Below are positions 229 through 62,248 of a stretch of 64,000 nucleotides of DNA, piece by piece. Location: positions 248,001 to 312,000 of IMG/VR virus record IMGVR_UViG_3300041411_000080. The stretch is one strand, 5' to 3'. How positions within the stretch are numbered: position 1 is the stretch's first letter; every line of letters starts with the position of its first letter. The position numbers and the translations under genes are program-made. The notes beneath the pieces were generated by a model. It worked only from the letters and a program-made list of their open reading frames with translations, was not told the origin of the DNA and ran no database searches.

Positions 229-258
229 GGGCATAAAGCCCCTCCCGAAGGAGGGACC
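229..258 (-). terminator. hairpin terminator with TTTATGCC tail
   Basis: CCCTCC-TTCG-GGAGGG stem-loop followed by GCTTTATGCCC on minus strand, after ORF 264. Confidence 0.8.
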
Positions 259-263
259 ACTAT

Positions 264-1559
264 TTAAGCAACGATGGTTTCCAGAGGATGAGCAATACTC
301 ATCGCTTCGGTTACCAGAGTTTGTCGATCGATCGACATGTTGTTTTTCAAGACAGCAGCACGAACTTGTGCAACGATCTCTGCGTGTTTCTCACCTTGCA
401 GATCATCAGGCAGAAGATCCGGGGTGATGTAACGAGCCAGTGCGTTGTCGAGGTTCTGTTCGAAAGCAGCTTGACGTTCTTCGTTGGTCAGCTCCACCGC
501 CGGAACATCCATGTGCAATAGTGGTGAGGTGAGACCACGACCTAATACAGCAGACGTAATTGGTTCTTCGGCTTGATCCTTCACTTCGCGACTAACACGT
601 TCTACGATCGGAGCAGATGGGTCGGCTTTAGCTTGCATAGCGTTCAGCAGGTTAGCTTGATAGTCAGGCAGTTTCTCACCCGATGCCAGCTCTACGAAGT
701 CTGCCAGTGGGATCTCTTTCAACAGACTACGTTTGTAGCTGTCTTGAGTATCCTGTTGAACCTTACCCAGCATGTTCAGGATGGTAGCACCCAGGACACG
801 TTTGGTACGTGCGTTGCGCATGTTCGGCAGGTGGTTGGACTTAGGCTTGGACTTCTTACGCTTGACCTTACGCTTGGAATCACCATTGTAGTCAGCAACA
901 GTCATCTTGTGCTTTGTAGCGTCAACATTTACCTGACCCGCGGCTTCAATCAGTTCAGCCAGTTCTTGGGTGCCTGGAGTTTCAGGAACGGTCAAGGCGT
1001 CACCCATTTTGTTGTTATGCGACGAGATGATTGAAATTTCACCGCGACGCTCACCGCCGAATACACCATGCTCTTTAGCTTGGGTAAGTTTAGCGATTTG
1101 CTCAGATTGTTCAGTAAATAGGGTCATGATGCCTTTTTCCTTGAGGGATTGTTGGACTGCGAAAGAACCCATTAGTTTTGTTCTTTCTTGAAATTGAATA
1201 TGCCGTACGGCGCCTAAAGTTTTGTACAGCTCAGTAAGGTTTTCCTCGTGTTCATCGTAAAGCTCACGAGCAAGATCCATTACTTCTTGGGAGTCCATGT
1301 GTTGACTTGGGACTGAACCCGAAAAGGAGCTATAGAGCATCTTCAGGTTAGGATCGCCAATCAACTCCCATACCCGACTGTGTACTTGATGCTGATGGAT
1401 ATCGTTATTCAAGGTGGCATACTTCAGCATCGAAGGTTTCATACCCAAGGTGCAAAGCGTGCTACCGGACATGGGCTGGAAGATCTCTTGACAGAGGTTG
1501 TTACCCCGAATACGCTCTGCGTCAGTCCAGGTGTCAGTCTTATACGGGTGCGGCAACAT
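264..1559 (-). CDS. mosaic hypothetical protein carrying terminase-, helicase- and RNAP-like motif fragments
   Basis: long ORF; GGAGG RBS before MLPHP start at 1559; contains LGRGLTSPLLHMD, GGERRGE, ADYNGD and a basic KRKVKRKKSK tract. Confidence 0.85.
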   Translation of the reverse strand: MLPHPYKTDTWTDAERIRGNNLCQEIFQPMSGSTLCTLGMKPSMLKYATLNNDIHQHQVHSRVWELIGDPNLKMLYSSFSGSVPSQHMDSQEVMDLARELYDEHEENLTELYKTLGAVRHIQFQERTKLMGSFAVQQSLKEKGIMTLFTEQSEQIAKLTQAKEHGVFGGERRGEISIISSHNNKMGDALTVPETPGTQELAELIEAAGQVNVDATKHKMTVADYNGDSKRKVKRKKSKPKSNHLPNMRNARTKRVLGATILNMLGKVQQDTQDSYKRSLLKEIPLADFVELASGEKLPDYQANLLNAMQAKADPSAPIVERVSREVKDQAEEPITSAVLGRGLTSPLLHMDVPAVELTNEERQAAFEQNLDNALARYITPDLLPDDLQGEKHAEIVAQVRAAVLKNNMSIDRQTLVTEAMSIAHPLETIVA

Positions 1560-6085: not shown

Positions 6086-6132
6086 GGTATTACTCCTGAA
6101 AAGGAAGGGATTTGTGTACGTATTGCACAAGA

Positions 6133-6170: not shown

Positions 6171-6202
6171 GGGCATAAAACCCTCTCCGAAGAGAGGGCT
6201 TT
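6171..6202 (-). terminator. hairpin terminator with TTTTATGCC tail
   Basis: CCCTCTC-TTCG-GAGAGGG then TTTTATGCCC. Confidence 0.8.
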
Positions 6203-6204
6203 AG

Positions 6205-6612
6205 TTAAACAAAAGTAACCGAGGTAGGATTCTCACCTTGGGCTTTGACTGCGGCCAAGATACGGTCCTTACGAGTTTCATCAAAGTCGTCGAACACCAT
6301 AGTCAGACGTTTACCGTTATGCACCGATAGGGTCCCAGTACGAATCCATGGAATACCAAGGATCTGAGTTTCCCCAGAACTGAAACGGATCTGGAAATAG
6401 TTGTACTGGGTTGGATCTACCGGCGTACCCGATGGGAGTGACTGGTAAACGTTTTGGTTAGCGCCTACTACGTCGAAGCCGAGCATCCGGGCAATGCCAG
6501 CATCGAACACGGCTGTAAGGGTTACGGCTTTAAAGTTGTTACCGTACTGTGCAGATGGGTATACCTCAAAGGAGATTACTGTGCCGATTGGGATCTCTTG
6601 AATAGTTGCCAT
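6205..6612 (-). CDS. conserved phiKZ-family protein (gp49-like by position)
   Basis: 135 aa, next to DNA polymerase, ILGIPWIR motif; homolog number from recalled synteny. Confidence 0.6.
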   Translation of the reverse strand: MATIQEIPIGTVISFEVYPSAQYGNNFKAVTLTAVFDAGIARMLGFDVVGANQNVYQSLPSGTPVDPTQYNYFQIRFSSGETQILGIPWIRTGTLSVHNGKRLTMVFDDFDETRKDRILAAVKAQGENPTSVTFV

Positions 6613-15031: not shown

Positions 15032-15049
15032 AGAAACCTCAAATACGGA

Positions 15050-15080
15050 ATAAAGCCCTACCCGAAGGTAGGGCGTTTTA
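15050..15080 (-). terminator. hairpin terminator after phuZ
   Basis: GCCCTACC-TTCG-GGTAGGGC-TTTATT. Confidence 0.8.
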
Positions 15081-15081
15081 T

Positions 15082-16056
15082 TTAGACTACCATGCCATCG
15101 TCATCGATGCTGTCGTCTGGATCGAGCAGCGGGTTACGCTGTACGAACATTGCTTGCTTACGGACTTGTTCGGTGCGGGTATCAGCGATACCCTTCATGA
15201 TTTCCACAACGCCTACGGAGTTGATCACGAAGTGCATTTGGTCATCAGTCACATCGGTATCATCAGCTTTCATAATACCGGCAGTGCGAACGATAGGGTT
15301 ACCGAAAGCGTATTCCTTGGACTCATCCAGATACAGGCTGGCTGTAGCGATTGGTTCAGGGATTGCTTCAGCATCTTTACGGCTGGTCTCGATATGCAGC
15401 TCACATACCTGAGGAGCCAGTTCCTTATGCTTGTCAGTGAACCGTACCCAGTTCGATACGTCATGCACATCAAGACGTACATGATTACCGTTGGTCAGGC
15501 ATACCACACGACGGATGTTCTCTGCGACGCTACGGTTAATAGCATCGAAGGTAATACCGTTTACGTTCGGGGTGTAGTTAACAACGATCGGCAACTTCAT
15601 ACGCATGGAAATGGCTTCAAGCGATTTCATGGTATCGATATCGTTTTGCAGAACCTCAGGAGATTCGGTTGCACCGATTACGAAGCTTACGAACGAAGCA
15701 CCGCGTTGAGCCAATTGGTTGGTGATCAATGGAGCAAGAGTAGAGCCCGAGCCACCACCCAACGAATAACCGAGGATGTAGAAGTCAGCTTCTGGCAGGG
15801 TTGCCATGAAGTCCTTGATCTGATCACGGATCAGAGGCAGGATGTACTTACGGTTCTTACCAGCACCACGAGTACCCTTAGTCAGGAACACGTTGGTTTT
15901 CTTGTGAGCGTCAACCAGGTTCTTGTCGCAGGTATCAACACAGTGGACGTTAGGCAAGTCCACCAAATGGGTAGCGATGTTAAGACCAGCACCACCAGCA
16001 AAGATCAAGCAGGTTTTTACTGGATCAGTGGATTTTTCAAAATCGTAAGGTGTCAT
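15082..16056 (-). CDS. phuZ: phage tubulin PhuZ
   Basis: GGAGLNI (T1), GAGKNR (T3), GGGSGS (T4), LDVHD (T7), acidic C-terminal tail DDDGMVV. Confidence 0.95.
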   Translation of the reverse strand: MTPYDFEKSTDPVKTCLIFAGGAGLNIATHLVDLPNVHCVDTCDKNLVDAHKKTNVFLTKGTRGAGKNRKYILPLIRDQIKDFMATLPEADFYILGYSLGGGSGSTLAPLITNQLAQRGASFVSFVIGATESPEVLQNDIDTMKSLEAISMRMKLPIVVNYTPNVNGITFDAINRSVAENIRRVVCLTNGNHVRLDVHDVSNWVRFTDKHKELAPQVCELHIETSRKDAEAIPEPIATASLYLDESKEYAFGNPIVRTAGIMKADDTDVTDDQMHFVINSVGVVEIMKGIADTRTEQVRKQAMFVQRNPLLDPDDSIDDDGMVV

Positions 16057-30952: not shown

Positions 30953-31082
30953 CTTTTGGTTCTCCCAAGTATGGAGCTTTGAACTCGATGTTATGAGTGT
31001 TAACTAACAGTCAATCATATTTATTAAACACGATTGATCACACTAGTTAAATTTTACGACCTTCAATAAAGGAGATTCGGTA

Positions 31083-47427: not shown

Positions 47428-47532
47428 AAACCTTATGCAAGAGGAAAGGATTCTAAAATATACTGACTGTTCAAAGACTATGTTAGAATCTATTTCAATC
47501 AAAACCATCAACACTAAAACTGGAAGTAAGAA

Positions 47533-49824
47533 ATGATCGAAACCATTATCAAACTGGACGGAACCGAAGAAGCCTTCAACGCCGCCAAGCCTAACCGCTG
47601 GATGGAATGGGGGGCTGAGAAACTTAAGGATAAGGTGGATTGGACTTCCATCGTAATGGAGGTAGCGGGTTCCTCCCCTAAGAAAGTAACTTCGCAAGTA
47701 TTCCAGATGTCTTTGATCGAACGTACATTGGCTGGTCGCACGTGGTCTCACTACATGTTGGCGGGTAAACTGTACGCAGCGTGGATTCACAAACACCTGT
47801 ATGGTTCTGACGGCATCCCTACCGTTAAAGCGTTGCACACTCGCATGCAACAAGACCGCTTGATGGTGAAACTGAATTACACCACCCAAGACTACATGAA
47901 GATCCAGAAGTTCATTAACCATGACCTGGACTTTGATCAACCACACTTCGCTCTTCACCAGATCCGCAAGAAATATGCTCTGGGTAACCGAGTTACAGGT
48001 AAAGAATATGAGTCGCCTCAATTTACGTACATGCGCATGGCAATGGCGCTTGCTGAGAACGAGCCTAAAGCAAACCGCATCCAAGTGGTTCGTGACTACT
48101 ACGAACTCTTTGCGCACAAGATGCTATCGGCACCTACCCCTAACTATATCAACCTCGGTACTGTACATCGGGGCTTCGCTAGCTGCTGCCTATTCGCATC
48201 TGGCGATAACGGTACTTCTCTGGCGATCGGGAACTTCATCGGCGACAAAATGACCCAGATGTCTGCGGGCATCGGCGTTAACATCATGACCCGATCCGTA
48301 GGCGATGCTGTACGTAACGGTCTGTTCCTGCACCACGGTAAGAAGAAGTATTACGATGCAATGGGTAAATCCATTGTGGCCAACATTCAAGCTGGTCGTG
48401 GTGGTGCTGTTACTTGCTTCTTTGAAGCATTCGATCAAGAAGTTGAGTTGATCCAAGCCCTGCGTAACCCACGTTCGACCGAAGACCGTCGTAACCGTGA
48501 TATGCACTTCGCTATGCTGGCTAACCGTCTGTTCGCTAAGAAAGCAGCTAAGGGTGAAGATATCTTCGCATTCAACCCGTACACTGCACCTGATCTGCAC
48601 GAAGCCTTCTACGGTAAAGACGTAGAACTGTTCGAAACACTTTACGCTAAATACGAAGCAGACGAGAAGTTCGTTAAGCATTACGCTTCGGCTCGTGAAG
48701 TTCTGAAGACCATGCTGAAAGAAGCTCAGGAAACTGGCGTAGCTTACGTGGGTCAGATTGACGAGATGAACCGTCACACCCCGTTCAAAGATCCTATCCG
48801 CAGTTCTAACCTGTGCATGGAAATCGCTGAGCCTACCGCTCCGTACTACGAGATGCCTGACCTGTTCTCTTCGGAAGACCATGGTCGTGGTGAGATCGCT
48901 ACTTGTTCGCTTGCAGCTGTATCGGTTGAGAACATCCCAGATCTGGCTACCTATAAGAAGGTTTGCTACTACGCTCTGAAGATGATCGACTACTGCATCC
49001 TGAATAGCTCTTACGTGTTCCCTCACTTGGAGTTCACCGCTAAGCAACGTATGAGTGCTGGCGTCGGTATCATGGGTCTGGCTACTCACCTGGCTAAGAA
49101 TGGTCTGAACTATACTTCGGACGCTGGTAAAGATGAGATGCACTTCATTGCTGAACGTCACATGTTCTGCTTGATCGAAGCTTCCCTGAAGATTTCGAAA
49201 GAACGTGGTCTGGCTCCATGGATGCATAAGACTCGCTGGCCTGAAGGTTGGTTGCCAATCGACACCTACAAGAAAGCTGTTGATACCATTAAGTCTGACG
49301 GTACTACATTCAGCAACCTGTTCAAGTGGGAAGACCTGCGCGCCCAGATCATCGAGAACGGCGGTATTGGTCACTCCGTACTGGCAGCTTACATGCCGGG
49401 TGAATCCAGCTCTAAAGCGCTTGGAGGAGCTAACAGCATCTATCCTGTACGTCGTCTGACTCTGTCTAAGAACGATCAGAACAATCACCTGTACTGGGCT
49501 GCTCCGTATGGTGATGATCCTGAAGTTAAGTACCAGTTCGCTTGGGATATTCCAACCAAGGACATGATCGACTGCTACGCTATCTTCCAGAAGTTCACAG
49601 ACCAAGCAATCTCTGCTGACCTGTATCGTCGTATCGTGGGTAACACCCAGATCGATATTAACGAACTGCTGAAAGAATACTTCTACATGGTTAAGATGGG
49701 GATGAAGTCTCGTTACTACTACAACACTGAAACCTCGTTGAACCTGTCGTTGGAAGCTATGGAATCTGCACACAGTAACATTACCGAAGACACTGACTGC
49801 GGTAGTGGTGCCTGCAAGATGTAA
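47533..49824 (+). CDS. nrdA: ribonucleotide reductase class Ia alpha subunit
   Basis: ESPQ..YMR, PTP, SCC, SNLCMEI, GVGIMGLA, YY, C-terminal CGSGAC. Confidence 0.95.
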   Translation: MIETIIKLDGTEEAFNAAKPNRWMEWGAEKLKDKVDWTSIVMEVAGSSPKKVTSQVFQMSLIERTLAGRTWSHYMLAGKLYAAWIHKHLYGSDGIPTVKALHTRMQQDRLMVKLNYTTQDYMKIQKFINHDLDFDQPHFALHQIRKKYALGNRVTGKEYESPQFTYMRMAMALAENEPKANRIQVVRDYYELFAHKMLSAPTPNYINLGTVHRGFASCCLFASGDNGTSLAIGNFIGDKMTQMSAGIGVNIMTRSVGDAVRNGLFLHHGKKKYYDAMGKSIVANIQAGRGGAVTCFFEAFDQEVELIQALRNPRSTEDRRNRDMHFAMLANRLFAKKAAKGEDIFAFNPYTAPDLHEAFYGKDVELFETLYAKYEADEKFVKHYASAREVLKTMLKEAQETGVAYVGQIDEMNRHTPFKDPIRSSNLCMEIAEPTAPYYEMPDLFSSEDHGRGEIATCSLAAVSVENIPDLATYKKVCYYALKMIDYCILNSSYVFPHLEFTAKQRMSAGVGIMGLATHLAKNGLNYTSDAGKDEMHFIAERHMFCLIEASLKISKERGLAPWMHKTRWPEGWLPIDTYKKAVDTIKSDGTTFSNLFKWEDLRAQIIENGGIGHSVLAAYMPGESSSKALGGANSIYPVRRLTLSKNDQNNHLYWAAPYGDDPEVKYQFAWDIPTKDMIDCYAIFQKFTDQAISADLYRRIVGNTQIDINELLKEYFYMVKMGMKSRYYYNTETSLNLSLEAMESAHSNITEDTDCGSGACKM

Positions 49825-49839
49825 ACAAAAAAAGAAACA

Positions 49840-49878
49840 ACATAAGACCCCTACCCGAAGGTAGGGGCTTTATGCCGT
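49840..49878. terminator. bidirectional hairpin terminator
   Basis: CATAAGACCCCTACC-CGAA-GGTAGGGG-CTTTATGCCG. Confidence 0.85.
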
Positions 49879-52649: not shown

Positions 52650-52710
52650 ACAAAGATTACTCTGCAAGCGTATGTATTGTAGACAAACACACATCACTTA
52701 AAGGTCCATC

Positions 52711-53874
52711 ATGTCCAAAGTAGATCTCCCGATTAAAATCTTCAATGCTAACAAAACCGACTACGACTCCAAAGAGATCATTCTGGGTCAAGAACCGGGG
52801 CTGTTCGATTCGATCAACAATCACCACCCCGTACTCTTCAACCTTTATAAGCGTTTGAAGATGATGGACTGGGATGAGAACGAATTCCCTTATGCTGACT
52901 GCCTGCATGAGTTTGAGACTTGTGACCGTACGTCTTACGAGATGATGATCAAGACTCTGGCTTGGCAATGGGAAGCTGACGCTACTGCTTCACGTTCGAT
53001 CATTAACGTGTTGGCTCCAGTACTAACTGACTCGCGTGTATTCGCGGGCTACAGTCTGATCACCAGTAACGAATGTCTGCATGCTCTGACTTATTCGGAG
53101 ATCGTGCGTAACTCGTTTAAGAATCCTCAAGTGATTCTGGATGAGATCCTGAAAGTACAAGAAGCTCAAGAGCGTCTGGTAACTGTAGCTAAGGTAATGG
53201 GTGAAGCACACGACGCTTCTCATGCTTACGCTTGCGGCACTATCCCGAATGATCAAGCTCTGTACAACAAGATCTTCAAGTTCCTGCTGGCTCTGTACTA
53301 CCTTGAGCGTGTTCAGTTCATGGCATCGTTTGCTGTGACCTTCGCCTTCGGTAAGATGGGTCGCTTCCAACCGATCGTAATGGGCGTTCAGAAGATCGCT
53401 ATCGACGAGTTCGAAGTACACGCTCAGTTCGGTCAAGAAGTTATCAAGGCTCTGCTGAAAACAGAACGTGGCCGTCTGGCTTACGAACAAACCAAAGAAG
53501 AAGGCACTAAGCTGTTCTGGGAAGTTCTGATGTCGGAAGTTCGCTGGTTGATGTACCTGTTCTCTGAAGGTCGTGAGCTGCCGGGTGTAACGCTGAAGAA
53601 GATGATCCAATGGGTCCTGTTCAACGGTAATGCTGCTGGTACCTTCACTGGCCACAAAGACATGCTGACTGAAGAGCATGCCGCTGAGTTCTTGGCGATC
53701 ACTGGTTTCGAACTGGAATGGCCTGAGAAGAACCCACTCCCGTACATGACCGAATACCTCGATCTTGCTGCAAACCAAACCAGTCCTCAAGAAGTAGACA
53801 ATAACCAGTACATGGTTAACGCTCTGGACACTTCCAACGAACAAGCAGAATTCGAAGTCGACTTCCTCGATTAA
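52711..53874 (+). CDS. nrdB: ribonucleotide reductase class Ia beta subunit
   Basis: di-iron ligands D, ECLH..TYS (radical Tyr), LE..F..SF, IAIDE..H; C-terminal SPQE...Y. Confidence 0.95.
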   Translation: MSKVDLPIKIFNANKTDYDSKEIILGQEPGLFDSINNHHPVLFNLYKRLKMMDWDENEFPYADCLHEFETCDRTSYEMMIKTLAWQWEADATASRSIINVLAPVLTDSRVFAGYSLITSNECLHALTYSEIVRNSFKNPQVILDEILKVQEAQERLVTVAKVMGEAHDASHAYACGTIPNDQALYNKIFKFLLALYYLERVQFMASFAVTFAFGKMGRFQPIVMGVQKIAIDEFEVHAQFGQEVIKALLKTERGRLAYEQTKEEGTKLFWEVLMSEVRWLMYLFSEGRELPGVTLKKMIQWVLFNGNAAGTFTGHKDMLTEEHAAEFLAITGFELEWPEKNPLPYMTEYLDLAANQTSPQEVDNNQYMVNALDTSNEQAEFEVDFLD

Positions 53875-53875
53875 C

Positions 53876-53898
53876 ATACTTTCTTGTAATAGTATGTA
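53876..53898 (+). promoter_or_regulatory. promoter-like element shared with tRNA cluster
   Basis: ATACTTTCTTGTAATAGTATGTA, 21/24 identical to 61883-61906; contains late motif TATG. Confidence 0.7.
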
Positions 53899-54010
53899 AC
53901 GGAAGCGATAACGTTACTCCATTAGCTCCCTTGTGGAATGCATGATGGTTCTCCTTTAGTGTTGGTTTGTGGGTTGGTAAAGTTCCTCCCTTCGGGGAGG
54001 ACTTTATTTT
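53896..54010 (+). ncRNA. candidate anti-Shine-Dalgarno small RNA
   Basis: promoter-like element, two 5' hairpins, CTCC motifs, complementarity to nrdB/nrdA leaders, terminator, no plausible ORF. Confidence 0.6.
53979..54010 (+). terminator. hairpin terminator
   Basis: AAAGTTCCTCCC-TTCG-GGGAGGACTTT-ATTTT. Confidence 0.85.
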
Positions 54011-54034: not shown

Positions 54035-54259
54035 ATGATTGTTATTAGCGAAGACCGATTAGCCCTACAGCAAGGAATCTATGACGATGTATTGTCAGAT
54101 ATCCTACCTGTGGTTAAGGCTAAGTGTAAAGGTGTTGCTCGGATCATAGTAGTCAAGCGAAAGCTTACTCCTACTGAAACTGAGTTCACTTGGATATTCA
54201 AAGGCACCAACAACGAAACCGAAGTTTACCATACATTCACAATTGAAGGAATGCAATAA
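54035..54259 (+). CDS. hypothetical protein
   Basis: AAGGA RBS. Confidence 0.7.
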   Translation: MIVISEDRLALQQGIYDDVLSDILPVVKAKCKGVARIIVVKRKLTPTETEFTWIFKGTNNETEVYHTFTIEGMQ

Positions 54260-54510
54260 TGACCCGTAATGAACAACTGATTAATACCATCCGTGACCTG
54301 CTGGGTGATGCCGACATTACATGGCAGGAACTGTTGCAGAAGATCCACACCAGCCACAGTGATATCAAACATGTCTATGGTATCCGTGACCATCAGGCAG
54401 ATATCTTGTCGTTGTCTATTAAGTGCAATGATCGTACCTTGATTACCTGTAACTTTGTACGTGAACCAATCGAACCGCCTCAAAGCTGGACGCTACCAGT
54501 CGAGCTGTAA
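54259..54510 (+). CDS. hypothetical protein
   Basis: TAATG coupling. Confidence 0.7.
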   Translation: MTRNEQLINTIRDLLGDADITWQELLQKIHTSHSDIKHVYGIRDHQADILSLSIKCNDRTLITCNFVREPIEPPQSWTLPVEL

Positions 54511-60455: not shown

Positions 60456-60460
60456 TAATA

Positions 60461-60490
60461 GCCCCTACCTTCGGGTAGGGGCTTATGTCG
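60461..60490 (+). terminator. hairpin terminator with TTATGTCG tail
   Basis: CCCCTACC-TTCG-GGTAGGGG-CTTATGTCG. Confidence 0.85.
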
Positions 60491-61882: not shown

Positions 61883-61906
61883 ATACTTTTGTTGCAATAG
61901 TATGTA
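61883..61906 (+). promoter_or_regulatory. promoter-like element of tRNA/ncRNA cluster
   Basis: ATACTTTTGTTGCAATAGTATGTA, near copy of 53876-53898. Confidence 0.7.
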
Positions 61907-61978
61907 GGACTATGAATCCTCAACGATTTCAGGAAGTTAGTAGATTGCTTAAATGTGATTAAAAGCTTCCGCTTATTT

Positions 61979-62083: not shown

Positions 62084-62248
62084 ATGAAGGTTAAAATTAA
62101 TCCCCGCCCATTAGTCAACCATGGTCCAGCTGATTGTCGCTGTTGCTCACGGTTGAACTGGAAGGATCTTAAACTTGATAAGCAAATTCTCAAAGAAGCT
62201 GTAAACGATGCTGACTACGCCCTCAGCAAACGTGAACAGCGTGCATAG
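62084..62248 (+). CDS. 54-aa protein inside tRNA cluster (MKVKINPRP...CRCC...), not in ORF track
   Basis: GAGGTG RBS, clean ORF. Confidence 0.6.
   Translation: MKVKINPRPLVNHGPADCRCCSRLNWKDLKLDKQILKEAVNDADYALSKREQRA

What the first reader, a model, noticed from the sequence alone, without database searches (positions are those of the whole stretch)
53876..54010. Candidate phage sRNA antisense to the translation-initiation regions of nrdB and nrdA
Seen: a complete non-coding unit. It has a promoter-like element 21/24 identical to the one before the tRNA cluster, a 5' hairpin GTAACG/CGTTAC starting at the G of TATG, a second hairpin exposing CTCCCTT (anti-SD) in its loop, an unpaired tract CATGATGGTTCTCCTTTAGTGTTGGTTTGT (53941-53970), then a terminator. 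By hand, that tract pairs with the nrdB leader and AUG (52683-52713) in blocks of 8+6+3+2+6 bp covering start codon and SD. TTTAGTGTTG pairs 10/10 with the nrdA leader (47509-47518), TGGTTCTCC 9/9 with the sheath SD region (30957-30965) and CTCCTTTAG 9/9 with the RBS of the gene at 214. Inference: a trans-acting translational regulator coordinating the separated nrd genes or the middle-to-late switch. Alternatively, a cis 3'UTR-5'UTR pairing in nrdB mRNA.
Basis: partly seen in the sequence, partly recalled or inferred. Interest (0 to 1): 0.85.

Follow-up and report, generated by a model that had tools for sequence, protein, structure and literature searches.

The report
Conserved jumbo-phage small RNA beside nrdB
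A roughly 115-base non-coding RNA gene just after the ribonucleotide reductase gene nrdB is conserved in a clade of giant Pseudomonas phages. It carries an 18-base invariant stretch that looks built to pair with ribosome-binding regions, and the leader of nrdA is the best conserved candidate target.

Summary
The unit is real. The window is a phiKZ-like (201phi2-1 / Viktualia-type) jumbo Pseudomonas phage.

At 53893-54010 (+) lie:
- a TATG start motif of the phage's own non-virion RNA polymerase;
- a hairpin beginning at +1;
- a weakly structured G/U- and C/U-rich tract;
- a strong intrinsic terminator.

Nine homologues (8 distinct) were found in phage genomes and metagenomes. Both helices keep pairing through compensatory changes and contain G·U pairs, so the structure belongs to the + strand. 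Eighteen bases (53950-53967) are invariant, whereas the adjacent nrdB gene has no invariant run longer than 14 and only 22% invariant third codon positions. No Rfam family matches, there is no paralogue in the window, and no convincing ORF lies on either strand. Viktualia annotates the locus as a 39-aa protein, probably wrongly.

- nrdA leader: pairing is present in all 7 phages tested and ranks 2/98 and 2/179 in an accessibility-aware scan.
- nrdB: pairing exists only in the window's sublineage.
- Sheath and "gene 214": these are generic Shine-Dalgarno matches.
- Second hairpin: neither significant nor conserved.

Best reading: a trans-acting anti-leader sRNA, a new member of a known kind. 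Its function is unproven.

The parts
53876..53895 (+). Promoter region ending in TATG (53893-53896), the phiKZ-type non-virion RNA polymerase start motif. It is the same subtype as the tRNA-cluster promoter.
   Evidence: 21/24 identity to 61883-61906. AATAGTATGTA is exact only at these two sites. TATGTA is kept in all 9 homologues. In Viktualia the sRNA and tRNA promoters share AATACTATGTAG instead. The meaning of TATG comes from PMC4666361.
53896..53917 (+). 5' hairpin starting at the predicted +1 G (6-bp stem, 10-nt loop).
   Evidence: -6.2 kcal/mol, 0/200 shuffles fold as well. 3 of 6 pairs show changes on both sides across homologues, and G·U pairs occur in 201phi2-1.
53918..53937 (+).
   Evidence: Not significant. 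A 9-nt deletion in L004 and different sequence in the other homologues.
53938..53977 (+). Conserved weakly structured tract: anti-start CATGAT, anti-Shine-Dalgarno TCTCC TTT, then a G/U-rich part. The invariant 18-mer is 53950-53967.
   Evidence: Invariant in 9 sequences. P(unpaired) is 0.44-0.87. The neighbouring nrdB CDS has a longest invariant run of 14 nt and 22% invariant third positions.
53978..54010 (+). Intrinsic terminator (stem 53984-54001, TTCG loop, T-run). It is also the only terminator available to nrdB transcripts.
   Evidence: 2 of 9 pairs show changes on both sides, and 94% of cells are paired.
47503..47520 (+). Candidate target site: a C/A-rich box in the nrdA 5' leader. The leader runs from the TATG at 47479-47482 to the ATG at 47533. 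The perfect 10-mer is 47509-47518.
   Evidence: The leader is unstructured.
52683..52713 (+). nrdB leader, Shine-Dalgarno sequence and AUG, complementary to the tract in this sublineage only. The nrdB leader starts at the TATG at 52671-52674.
52711..53874 (+). nrdB coding sequence. Its read-through transcript would carry the whole element as a 3'UTR.
   Evidence: There is no terminator between the stop codon and 53984.
61883..61906 (+). Sister promoter in front of the tRNA-Tyr/Asn/Trp cluster.
54035..54510 (+). Two small ORFs (74 and 83 aa, no PHROG match). They have no TATG of their own and can be expressed only by read-through of the element's terminator.
   Evidence: Downstream gene content differs between relatives.

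Best explanation
The element is a gene for a small RNA of roughly 110-120 nt, conserved in Serwervirus-like (201phi2-1 / Viktualia-type) nucleus-forming jumbo phages.

**Inferred from sequence.** The phage's non-virion RNA polymerase starts at the G of TATG (53896). This promoter is of the same subtype as the tRNA cluster's. Transcription stops at the intrinsic terminator (about 54010). The +1 hairpin most likely protects the 5' end.

**Shown.**
- The promoter motif, both helices and an 18-nt invariant tract are conserved.
- Covariation and G·U pairs place the structure on the + strand.
- The constraint acts on nucleotides, not on codons.

**Inferred mechanism.** The invariant C/U-then-G/U-rich tract resembles the 3' end of 16S rRNA, and its reverse complement reads as an ideal ribosome-binding site plus ATG. 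It would act as a seed that pairs with mRNA leaders and initiation regions in the cytoplasm and blocks 30S binding.

The best conserved candidate target is the C/A-rich box just 5' of the Shine-Dalgarno sequence in the nrdA leader. In the window's sublineage the tract additionally covers the Shine-Dalgarno sequence and AUG of nrdB, either in trans or in cis within a read-through nrdB mRNA. In phages with a co-directional downstream gene, the same terminator also gates that gene by read-through.
For: **Conservation.** Nine homologous loci were found, 8 of them distinct. The model built from them finds exactly one copy per locus, at 97-125 bits, and no paralogue in the window or in 100 kb of 201phi2-1.

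**Structure.** 95.8% of cells are paired, against 36-52% when the partners are slid. Five pairs show changes on both sides, and 0 of 500 shuffles reach the covariation score.

**Nucleotide-level constraint.** The 18 invariant bases compare with a longest invariant run of 14 nt and 22% invariant third positions in nrdB.

**Modularity.** Viktualia has an intervening gene. 201phi2-1 and L006 have a convergent downstream gene.

**Promoter.** TATG with the start at G is the phiKZ non-virion polymerase motif. The sRNA and tRNA promoters co-vary between the window and Viktualia.

**nrdA.**
- The longest perfect complement is the top of 98 leaders in the window and tied top of 178 in 201phi2-1.
- Shuffled-leader P values are 0.004, 0.004 and 0.007 in three lineages.
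- The window and L004 have the same tract and each keeps a 10-mer, but in different registers.
- The accessibility-aware rank is 2/98 and 2/179, and all 7 phages give -12.7 to -16.4 kcal/mol at the same leader position.
- The leader is unstructured.

**Analogy.** phiKZ's northern-validated 141-nt ncRNA has the same architecture. It carries a 14-nt perfect antisense match to the PHIKZ297 start region.
Against: - No transcript, start site or regulation was observed here. The 201phi2-1 sRNA table (Table S4 of PMC11512511) is not held, so I could not check whether this locus is among its 11 sRNAs.
- Target ranks depend on the method. With hybridisation energy alone and longer leaders, nrdA falls to 56/98 and nrdB to 11/98. 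A two-genome rank product puts a gp29-like virion gene first.
- The nrdA leaders are homologous, so the 7 phages are not independent tests.
- L011 and Viktualia have only 6-nt perfect matches. Viktualia's best duplex uses a different G/U box.
- C/A-rich leaders seem common in these phages.
- Only 64 kb of about 320 kb of this genome, and no host genome, could be scanned. The true main target may lie elsewhere.
- My IntaRNA-like score is home-made.
Confidence: 0.5

Rival explanations
1. It is a purely cis-acting leader and terminator. The unit would be the nrdB terminator plus a 5' leader whose conditional (premature) termination gates the downstream ORFs. The short RNA would be a by-product without a trans function. 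This is the class described for many phiKZ and 201phi2-1 '5'UTR-derived' small transcripts.
For: In the window, L004, L007, L011 and Viktualia a co-directional gene follows the unit. In the window no TATG lies between 54010 and 54035. Putzeys 2024 describes 34 such two-mode terminators.
Against: In 201phi2-1 and L006 the next gene is convergent, yet the unit is fully conserved. The downstream genes differ between relatives while the 18-mer is invariant. A simple attenuator does not need an invariant single-stranded tract.
Confidence: 0.2
2. It is a base-pairing or decoy RNA whose main partner is not an nrd mRNA. The partner could be a phage gene outside the window, a host Pseudomonas mRNA, or Shine-Dalgarno sequences in general (a 16S 3'-end mimic). 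It could also be a protein that recognises that sequence.
For: The tract's complement is a near-ideal ribosome-binding site. The 18-mer also turns up as the antisense of ordinary ribosome-binding sites in unrelated contigs (L005, L009, L010). Genes with strong Shine-Dalgarno sequences (gp29-like, sheath) rank at the top. An invariant seed is typical of multi-target sRNAs.
Against: There is no second perfect 18-mer or 17-mer site in the IMG/VR copies of these genomes. A 16-mer scan of bacterial genomes returned only scattered taxa and no Pseudomonas among 120 rows, although it was truncated. The non-Shine-Dalgarno half (AGTGTTGGTT) is as invariant as the anti-Shine-Dalgarno half, and that half is what matches nrdA.
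Confidence: 0.15
3. It acts by cis 3'UTR-5'UTR pairing within the nrdB mRNA. The tract, carried as the nrdB 3'UTR, would fold back on the nrdB Shine-Dalgarno sequence and AUG to autoregulate nrdB.
For: No terminator separates the nrdB stop codon from the unit. The duplex is -27 kcal/mol in the window and L004 and -22.6 in L007.
Against: The pairing is absent in 201phi2-1, L006 and Viktualia, at or near background level (-4.1 to -6.3 kcal/mol against a mean of about -6), and modest in L011 (-9.9). nrdB ranks 143/179 in 201phi2-1. In 201phi2-1 and L011 nrdB is coupled to an upstream ORF. Viktualia has a gene in between. The unit has its own conserved promoter.
Confidence: 0.1
4. It encodes a micro-protein. 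Candidates are the + strand frame reading ..H-D-(xx)-S-P-L-V-L-V.., or the minus-strand mini-ORF behind the mirror-image ribosome-binding site (MHSTRELME in the window).
For: The + frame is open across the tract in all 8 distinct sequences, and the indels between CAT and TCTCC are multiples of 3. The minus strand shows AAAGGAGA, a spacer, then ATG/GTG in all of them. Viktualia annotates a 39-aa CDS here.
Against: **+ frame.**
- L014 has no in-frame start codon.
- There is no Shine-Dalgarno sequence.
- The C-termini run into the terminator and differ.
- All 6 would-be third positions are invariant, against 22% in nrdB (P about 1e-4).

**Minus ORF.**
- The peptides are 6, 9, 10, 10 and 18 aa, or run on, with no conserved sequence or frame.
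- L014 has a spacer of only 3-4 nt.
- A minus-strand terminator at 54544-54519, and one in 201phi2-1, stops incoming transcription.
- G·U pairs would become A·C mismatches on that strand.
Confidence: 0.05

Closest known systems
phiKZ 141-nt ncRNA upstream of PHIKZ302 (TU237/T131; Putzeys et al. 2024, PMC10914365), northern-validated
   Same: It sits in the same genomic neighbourhood (nrdB, gp303 homologue, tRNA region). It starts at TATG with a hairpin at +1, has C/U-rich exposed segments, ends in a CCTTCGGG-type terminator and is of similar size. It also carries an anti-start tract, a 14-nt perfect match to the PHIKZ297 initiation region.
   Different: There is no detectable sequence homology. 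Model R1 hits only its terminator, at 13.8 bits. It lies at a different position (after gp303, not after nrdB) and has no complementarity to the phiKZ nrd leaders.
The 11 sRNAs reported for 201phi2-1 by ONT-cappable-seq (Poppeliers et al. 2024, PMC11512511), 3 of them intergenic
   Same: Same phage clade and same definition: a start site closely followed by a terminator, under 250 nt. The 201phi2-1 orthologue (record 308613-308723, minus strand) is intergenic between gp457 and gp456.
   Different: I could not establish whether the orthologue is one of the eleven, because Table S4 is not held. The one sRNA discussed in the text (sRNA005, upstream of gp277) is a different locus.
GcvB-type bacterial sRNAs, with a G/U-rich seed pairing with C/A-rich elements upstream of the Shine-Dalgarno sequence (from my own knowledge of the family)
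   Same: A G/U-rich single-stranded conserved seed, a C/A-rich unstructured target box just 5' of the Shine-Dalgarno sequence (nrdA leader), and an intrinsic terminator with a U-tail.
   Different: There is no homology. It is phage-encoded and transcribed by a phage polymerase. It additionally carries an anti-Shine-Dalgarno and anti-AUG segment. Hfq dependence is unknown.
C/U-rich anti-Shine-Dalgarno sRNAs (e.g. staphylococcal RNAIII / RsaE UCCC motifs) and phage translational repressors such as T4 RegA (from my own knowledge)
   Same: The functional logic is the same: occlusion of ribosome-binding sites of several mRNAs during a developmental programme.
   Different: RegA is a protein. The staphylococcal motifs sit in hairpin loops, whereas here the CUCC lies in a long, weakly structured tract. 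No experimental data exist for this RNA.

Membership tests
phiKZ-type non-virion RNA polymerase promoter | 5'-TATG-3' with transcription starting at the G (PMC4666361) | tested here: met
   TATG lies at 53893-53896 and TATGTA is kept in all 9 homologues. This is sequence-level only, and TATG alone is not sufficient for activity.
phiKZ-type non-virion RNA polymerase promoter | Mapped 5' end or in vitro initiation at that G | not testable with these tools
   No transcript data are available. The 201phi2-1 start-site table is not held.
Intrinsic (Rho-independent) terminator | G+C-rich hairpin followed by a T-run | tested here: met
   (compensatory changes).
Trans-encoded base-pairing sRNA | Own promoter and terminator, no coding capacity | tested here: met
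   It is modular in Viktualia and 201phi2-1.
Trans-encoded base-pairing sRNA | Conserved accessible seed | tested here: met
   An 18-nt invariant tract with P(unpaired) of 0.44-0.87.
Trans-encoded base-pairing sRNA | Conserved complementarity to a target mRNA beyond background | tested here: inconclusive
   nrdA ranks 2/98 and 2/179, and all 7 phages give -12.7 or lower. However, energy-only ranks are poor and the leaders are not independent. nrdB pairing is lineage-specific.
Trans-encoded base-pairing sRNA | Demonstrated regulation or chaperone (Hfq) binding | not testable with these tools
   -
Any Rfam 15 family | Score at or above the family gathering threshold | tested here: not met
   Only tRNAs in the window reach threshold. 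The best local hit is rnk_pseudo at 23 bits against 55 required.
5'UTR-derived ncRNA by premature termination (Putzeys 2024 class) | Start site, then a terminator upstream of a co-directional gene that shares the start site | tested here: inconclusive
   The layout fits in the window, L004, L007, L011 and Viktualia. It does not fit in 201phi2-1 and L006.
Homologue of the phiKZ PHIKZ302-upstream ncRNA | Sequence and structure similarity over the body of the RNA | tested here: not met
   R1 matches only the terminator of that locus, at 13.8 bits. The sequences differ.
Small protein gene | Start codon with Shine-Dalgarno sequence, conserved frame and ends, codon-like substitution pattern | tested here: not met

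The most novel reading that the evidence does not exclude
This would be the first jumbo-phage (Chimalliviridae) small RNA with an assignable target. The RNA would be made in the phage nucleus, exported, and would throttle translation of the phage's own ribonucleotide reductase. It would act on nrdA in the whole clade and on nrdB as well in one sublineage. It would pair through a 16S-3'-end-like invariant seed and would be co-regulated with the tRNA cluster. Together with the phiKZ ncRNA/PHIKZ297 match, this would point to a general layer of anti-initiation-region sRNA control in nucleus-forming phages.
Probability: 0.3. Interest if true: 0.7.

Novelty: new member of a known kind. Interest (0 to 1): 0.55.

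Why it matters
Small RNAs have been seen in the transcriptomes of phiKZ and 201phi2-1, but none has a known function.

This locus gives:
- a family definition (alignment A2, model R1, 9 members);
- a correction to an annotated 'hypothetical protein' in Viktualia;
- a concrete, cheap hypothesis to test: seed GUGUUGG pairing with the CCAACAC box in the nrdA leader.

If confirmed, nucleus-forming phages would be shown to use RNA-RNA control of nucleotide metabolism after mRNA export.

Tried and rejected
- **Rfam.** Gathering and E-value scans found nothing.
- **Paralogues.** Model R1 searches of the window, 100 kb of 201phi2-1, phiKZ and about 20 distant nrdA/nrdB loci found only hairpin-plus-terminator look-alikes.
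- **Wider homologue search.** Two relaxed pattern scans added no viral homologue. One metagenome scan added two.
- **Host target.**
  - A 16-mer scan of bacterial genomes gave 120+ scattered taxa and no Pseudomonas listed. It was truncated and is uninformative.
  - BLAST of the tract against E. coli genomes gave no match.
- **Second perfect site in the phage genomes.** The 15-mer scan was swamped by unrelated ribosome-binding sites. The 17-mer of the 201 type hit only the element itself.
- **Target ranking.**
  - Sliding 46-nt RNAduplex over the whole window rewards long imperfect duplexes and is not discriminating.
  - My first accessibility script lost most targets because duplexes exceeded the length cap, so I discarded it.
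  - I replaced it with a windowed version.
- **Co-variation test in the more distant clade.** Those phages (NrdB 57% identical) have only a terminator after nrdB and no sRNA unit, so the test was not possible.
- **Published tables.** Supplementary tables of both transcriptome papers are not held.
- **Central long-range helix.** A helix between UCCAUUG and UGGUUGG appears in some single-sequence folds, but its register is inconsistent and RNAalifold does not predict it. I left it out.

Full report
**Context**

The window is part of a phiKZ-like (Chimalliviridae) jumbo Pseudomonas phage.
- Its nrdB region matches Pseudomonas phage Viktualia at 81% and 201phi2-1 at about 70% nucleotide identity.
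- The window is identical to IMG/VR contig IMGVR_UViG_3300041411_000080, 320,858 bp.
- nrdB is 52711-53874 (+).
- The next + strand ORF starts at 54035, and the finding lies in the 160-bp gap between them.

**Checking the observation**

- The promoter-like stretch 53876-53898 aligns with 61883-61906, in front of tRNA-Tyr, at 21 of 24 columns. The core AATAGTATGTA is exact only at those two places in 64 kb.
- The 5' hairpin 53896-53917 starts at the G of TATG and is more stable than all 200 shuffles.
- The terminator (stem 53984-54001, T-run to 54010) is found by the consensus scan and is likewise beyond all shuffles.
- The nrdB-leader duplex, the 10/10 match in the nrdA leader (47509-47518) and the two 9/9 matches all exist.

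Three points are weaker than stated.
- The 'second hairpin' is not significant (23 of 200 shuffles fold as well). It is not in the full-length minimum-energy fold and is removed by a 9-nt deletion in the closest relative.
- The tract is only moderately unpaired, with P(unpaired) of 0.44 in the window.
- Perfect complements of 10 nt or more occur in the window about as often as chance predicts: 5 excluding the element itself, against about 4 expected.

**What it is**

The 18-mer at 53950-53967 recurs exactly in 201phi2-1, Viktualia, four further IMG/VR jumbo-phage contigs and two metagenome contigs. In every case it sits inside the same unit. The unit consists of:
- TATGTA;
- a hairpin at +1;
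- a conserved middle;
- a terminator with a TTCG loop.

The other exact hits (L005, L009, L010) are unrelated phages in which the 18-mer is simply the antisense of an ordinary ribosome-binding site. That already says what the tract looks like.

On the 9-sequence alignment A2 (8 distinct rows), the two helices are 95.8% paired, against 36-52% when the 3' partners are slid. Five pairs change on both sides, and no shuffle out of 500 reaches the covariation score. Several pairs are G·U, which would be A·C on the other strand, so the structure belongs to the + strand RNA.

Across the same seven phages:
- only 22% of nrdB third codon positions are invariant;
- the longest invariant run in nrdB, a well-conserved enzyme gene, is 14 nt;
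- the element has 18 invariant bases in a row.

The constraint therefore acts on the nucleotide sequence itself.

**Coding potential**

The + frame through the tract is open in all sequences, and the indels just upstream are multiples of three. This remains unexplained. Against a coding role:
- one homologue (L014) has no in-frame start;
- there is no Shine-Dalgarno sequence;
- the ends differ;
- six out of six would-be synonymous sites are frozen.

A terminator at 54544-54519 stops the nearest minus-strand transcript. Viktualia's 39-aa 'hypothetical protein' CDS0172 covers this locus and is most likely a mis-annotation.

**Independence of the unit**
- In Viktualia an extra gene separates nrdB from the unit.
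- In 201phi2-1 and L006 the next gene is convergent, so nothing co-directional follows.
- In the window, L004, L007 and L011 different small ORFs follow.

The unit is thus conserved as a module, whatever surrounds it.

The covariance model R1 finds one copy per genome segment and no paralogue. More distant relatives (NrdB 57% identical) have only a terminator after nrdB. The family therefore appears confined to the 201phi2-1/Viktualia clade. Rfam has nothing like it.

**Transcription signals**

In phiKZ the non-virion RNA polymerase recognises 5'-TATG-3' and starts at the G. [quoted passage not shown]

The window's sRNA and tRNA-cluster promoters share AATAGTATGTA. In Viktualia both share AATACTATGTAG instead. 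The two promoters therefore co-vary, which suggests co-regulation.

In 201phi2-1 the tRNA is reported to be driven by a 'middle' promoter. Assigning the sRNA to that class is inference. nrdA (TATG 47479-47482) and nrdB (TATG 52671-52674) also start from TATG motifs.

**Targets**

That tract was defined around the nrdB match. With a wider tract and longer leaders the order changes to sheath 6, nrdB 11 and nrdA 56 of 98. A two-genome rank product over 49 orthologue pairs puts a gp29-like virion gene first, nrdA 7th and nrdB 13th. Pure hybridisation energy rewards strong Shine-Dalgarno sequences and is not robust.

Two other measures single out nrdA.

1. *Longest perfect complement.*
   - The nrdA leader is top of 98 leaders in the window and tied top of 178 in 100 kb of 201phi2-1.
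   - Shuffled-leader P values are 0.004 (window), 0.004 (L004), 0.007 (201phi2-1), 0.086 (L007), and not significant in L011 and Viktualia.
   - The window and L004 have the same tract but different leader sequences. Each keeps a 10-mer complement in a different register.
2. *Accessibility-aware score of my own.* It combines 24-nt windowed duplex energy with opening energies.
   - nrdA ranks 2/98 in the window and 2/179 in 201phi2-1.
   - nrdB ranks 7/98 but 143/179.
   - Sheath ranks 5 and 15, and gp29-like ranks 1 and 33.
   - For a pre-specified gene the rank product corresponds to P of about 0.002. The two leaders are homologous, so this overstates independence.

In all seven phages with both loci, the phage's own sRNA against its own nrdA leader gives -12.7 to -16.4 kcal/mol. 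The site is always a C/A-rich box at -36..-9, just 5' of the Shine-Dalgarno sequence. The window's leader is unstructured.

nrdB pairing is strong only in the window, L004 and L007. In 201phi2-1 and L011 nrdB is coupled to an upstream ORF.

**Mechanism proposed**
- *Shown:* a conserved, structured, non-coding unit on the + strand, with an invariant tract.
- *Inferred:* a phage-polymerase transcript of about 115 nt whose seed pairs with mRNA leaders and blocks initiation.
- *Best candidate target:* nrdA throughout the clade, plus nrdB (in trans, or in cis as its 3'UTR) in the window's sublineage.
- *Second role:* where a co-directional gene follows, read-through of the terminator would also gate that gene.

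I put about 0.85 on 'real conserved small RNA gene', about 0.55 on 'acts by base pairing through the invariant tract' and about 0.4 on 'nrdA is a genuine target'. The overall figure is 0.5.

**Comparison with what is known**

Small transcripts of this layout are documented by ONT-cappable-seq in phiKZ (17 candidates, two confirmed by northern blot) and in 201phi2-1 (11 sRNAs, three intergenic). None has a known function.
- I could not check whether the 201phi2-1 orthologue is in that list.
- The phiKZ 141-nt ncRNA upstream of PHIKZ302 shares the architecture but not the sequence.
- In passing I found that this phiKZ ncRNA carries a 14-nt perfect antisense match across the PHIKZ297 start codon. 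No such repeat occurred in 200 shuffles. The anti-initiation-region design may therefore be general in these phages.
- By mechanism, the nearest bacterial analogues are G/U-rich-seed sRNAs such as GcvB and C/U-rich anti-Shine-Dalgarno sRNAs. This comparison rests on my own knowledge and is not a test.

**Verdict**

This is a genuine, previously unnamed sRNA family in a clade of jumbo phages, and so a new member of a known kind. The nrdB idea is lineage-specific. The sheath, gene-214 and second-hairpin points are not meaningful. Function remains to be shown experimentally.

Noticed in passing
L012 (phiKZ NC_004629 268000-280334): 6106-6119 and 2358-2371: The northern-validated phiKZ 141-nt ncRNA upstream of PHIKZ302 contains a 14-nt perfect antisense match to the start-codon region of PHIKZ297. 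None of 200 shuffles gives such a repeat. It shares the layout of TATG, +1 hairpin and terminator.
   Followed up: partly
L001:7513-7632 (Viktualia PV037725, CDS0172): The annotated 39-aa hypothetical protein coincides with the sRNA orthologue and is probably a mis-annotation.
   Followed up: partly
window 53938-53975 and homologues: One + strand reading frame stays open through the tract in all 8 distinct homologues. The indels between CAT and TCTCC are 6, 9 or 12 nt, always multiples of 3. This is unexplained if the locus is non-coding, although other evidence argues against a peptide.
   Followed up: partly
window 61883-61978; L001:11150-11197: The tRNA-cluster promoter is followed by a leader of about 75 nt that also begins with a short hairpin at +1. 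201phi2-1 is reported to yield an sRNA immediately upstream of a tRNA. A 54-aa ORF (62084-62248) sits between tRNA-Tyr and tRNA-Asn.
   Followed up: no
window 47479-47482 and 52671-52674: Both nrdA and nrdB are preceded by TATG motifs, giving leaders of about 51 and 37 nt. TATGTTAGAATCTATTT upstream of nrdA is kept intact in 5 of the 7 relatives examined, with variants in L007 and L011.
   Followed up: partly
window 54035-54510 versus L004, L007, L011, 201phi2-1: Gene content just downstream of the element's terminator differs in every relative: two orphan ORFs here, other ORFs elsewhere and none in 201phi2-1. This looks like an insertion hot spot.
   Followed up: no
window 230-338(-), 6172-6272(-), 15047-15142(-), 49847-49870(-), 60460-60482(+): Many terminators in this phage, and in phiKZ, share the same CCTTCGGG-type stem-loop, which is why the RNA model gives weak hits there.
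   Followed up: partly
L177-L180 (distant jumbo-phage contigs), about 60 nt after the nrdB stop: The gene following nrdB in that clade has a strongly C/A-rich leader (for example ..CAACAAACACACAGCAAGG..). C/A-rich leaders may be a general feature of these phages, which tempers the nrdA result.
   Followed up: no
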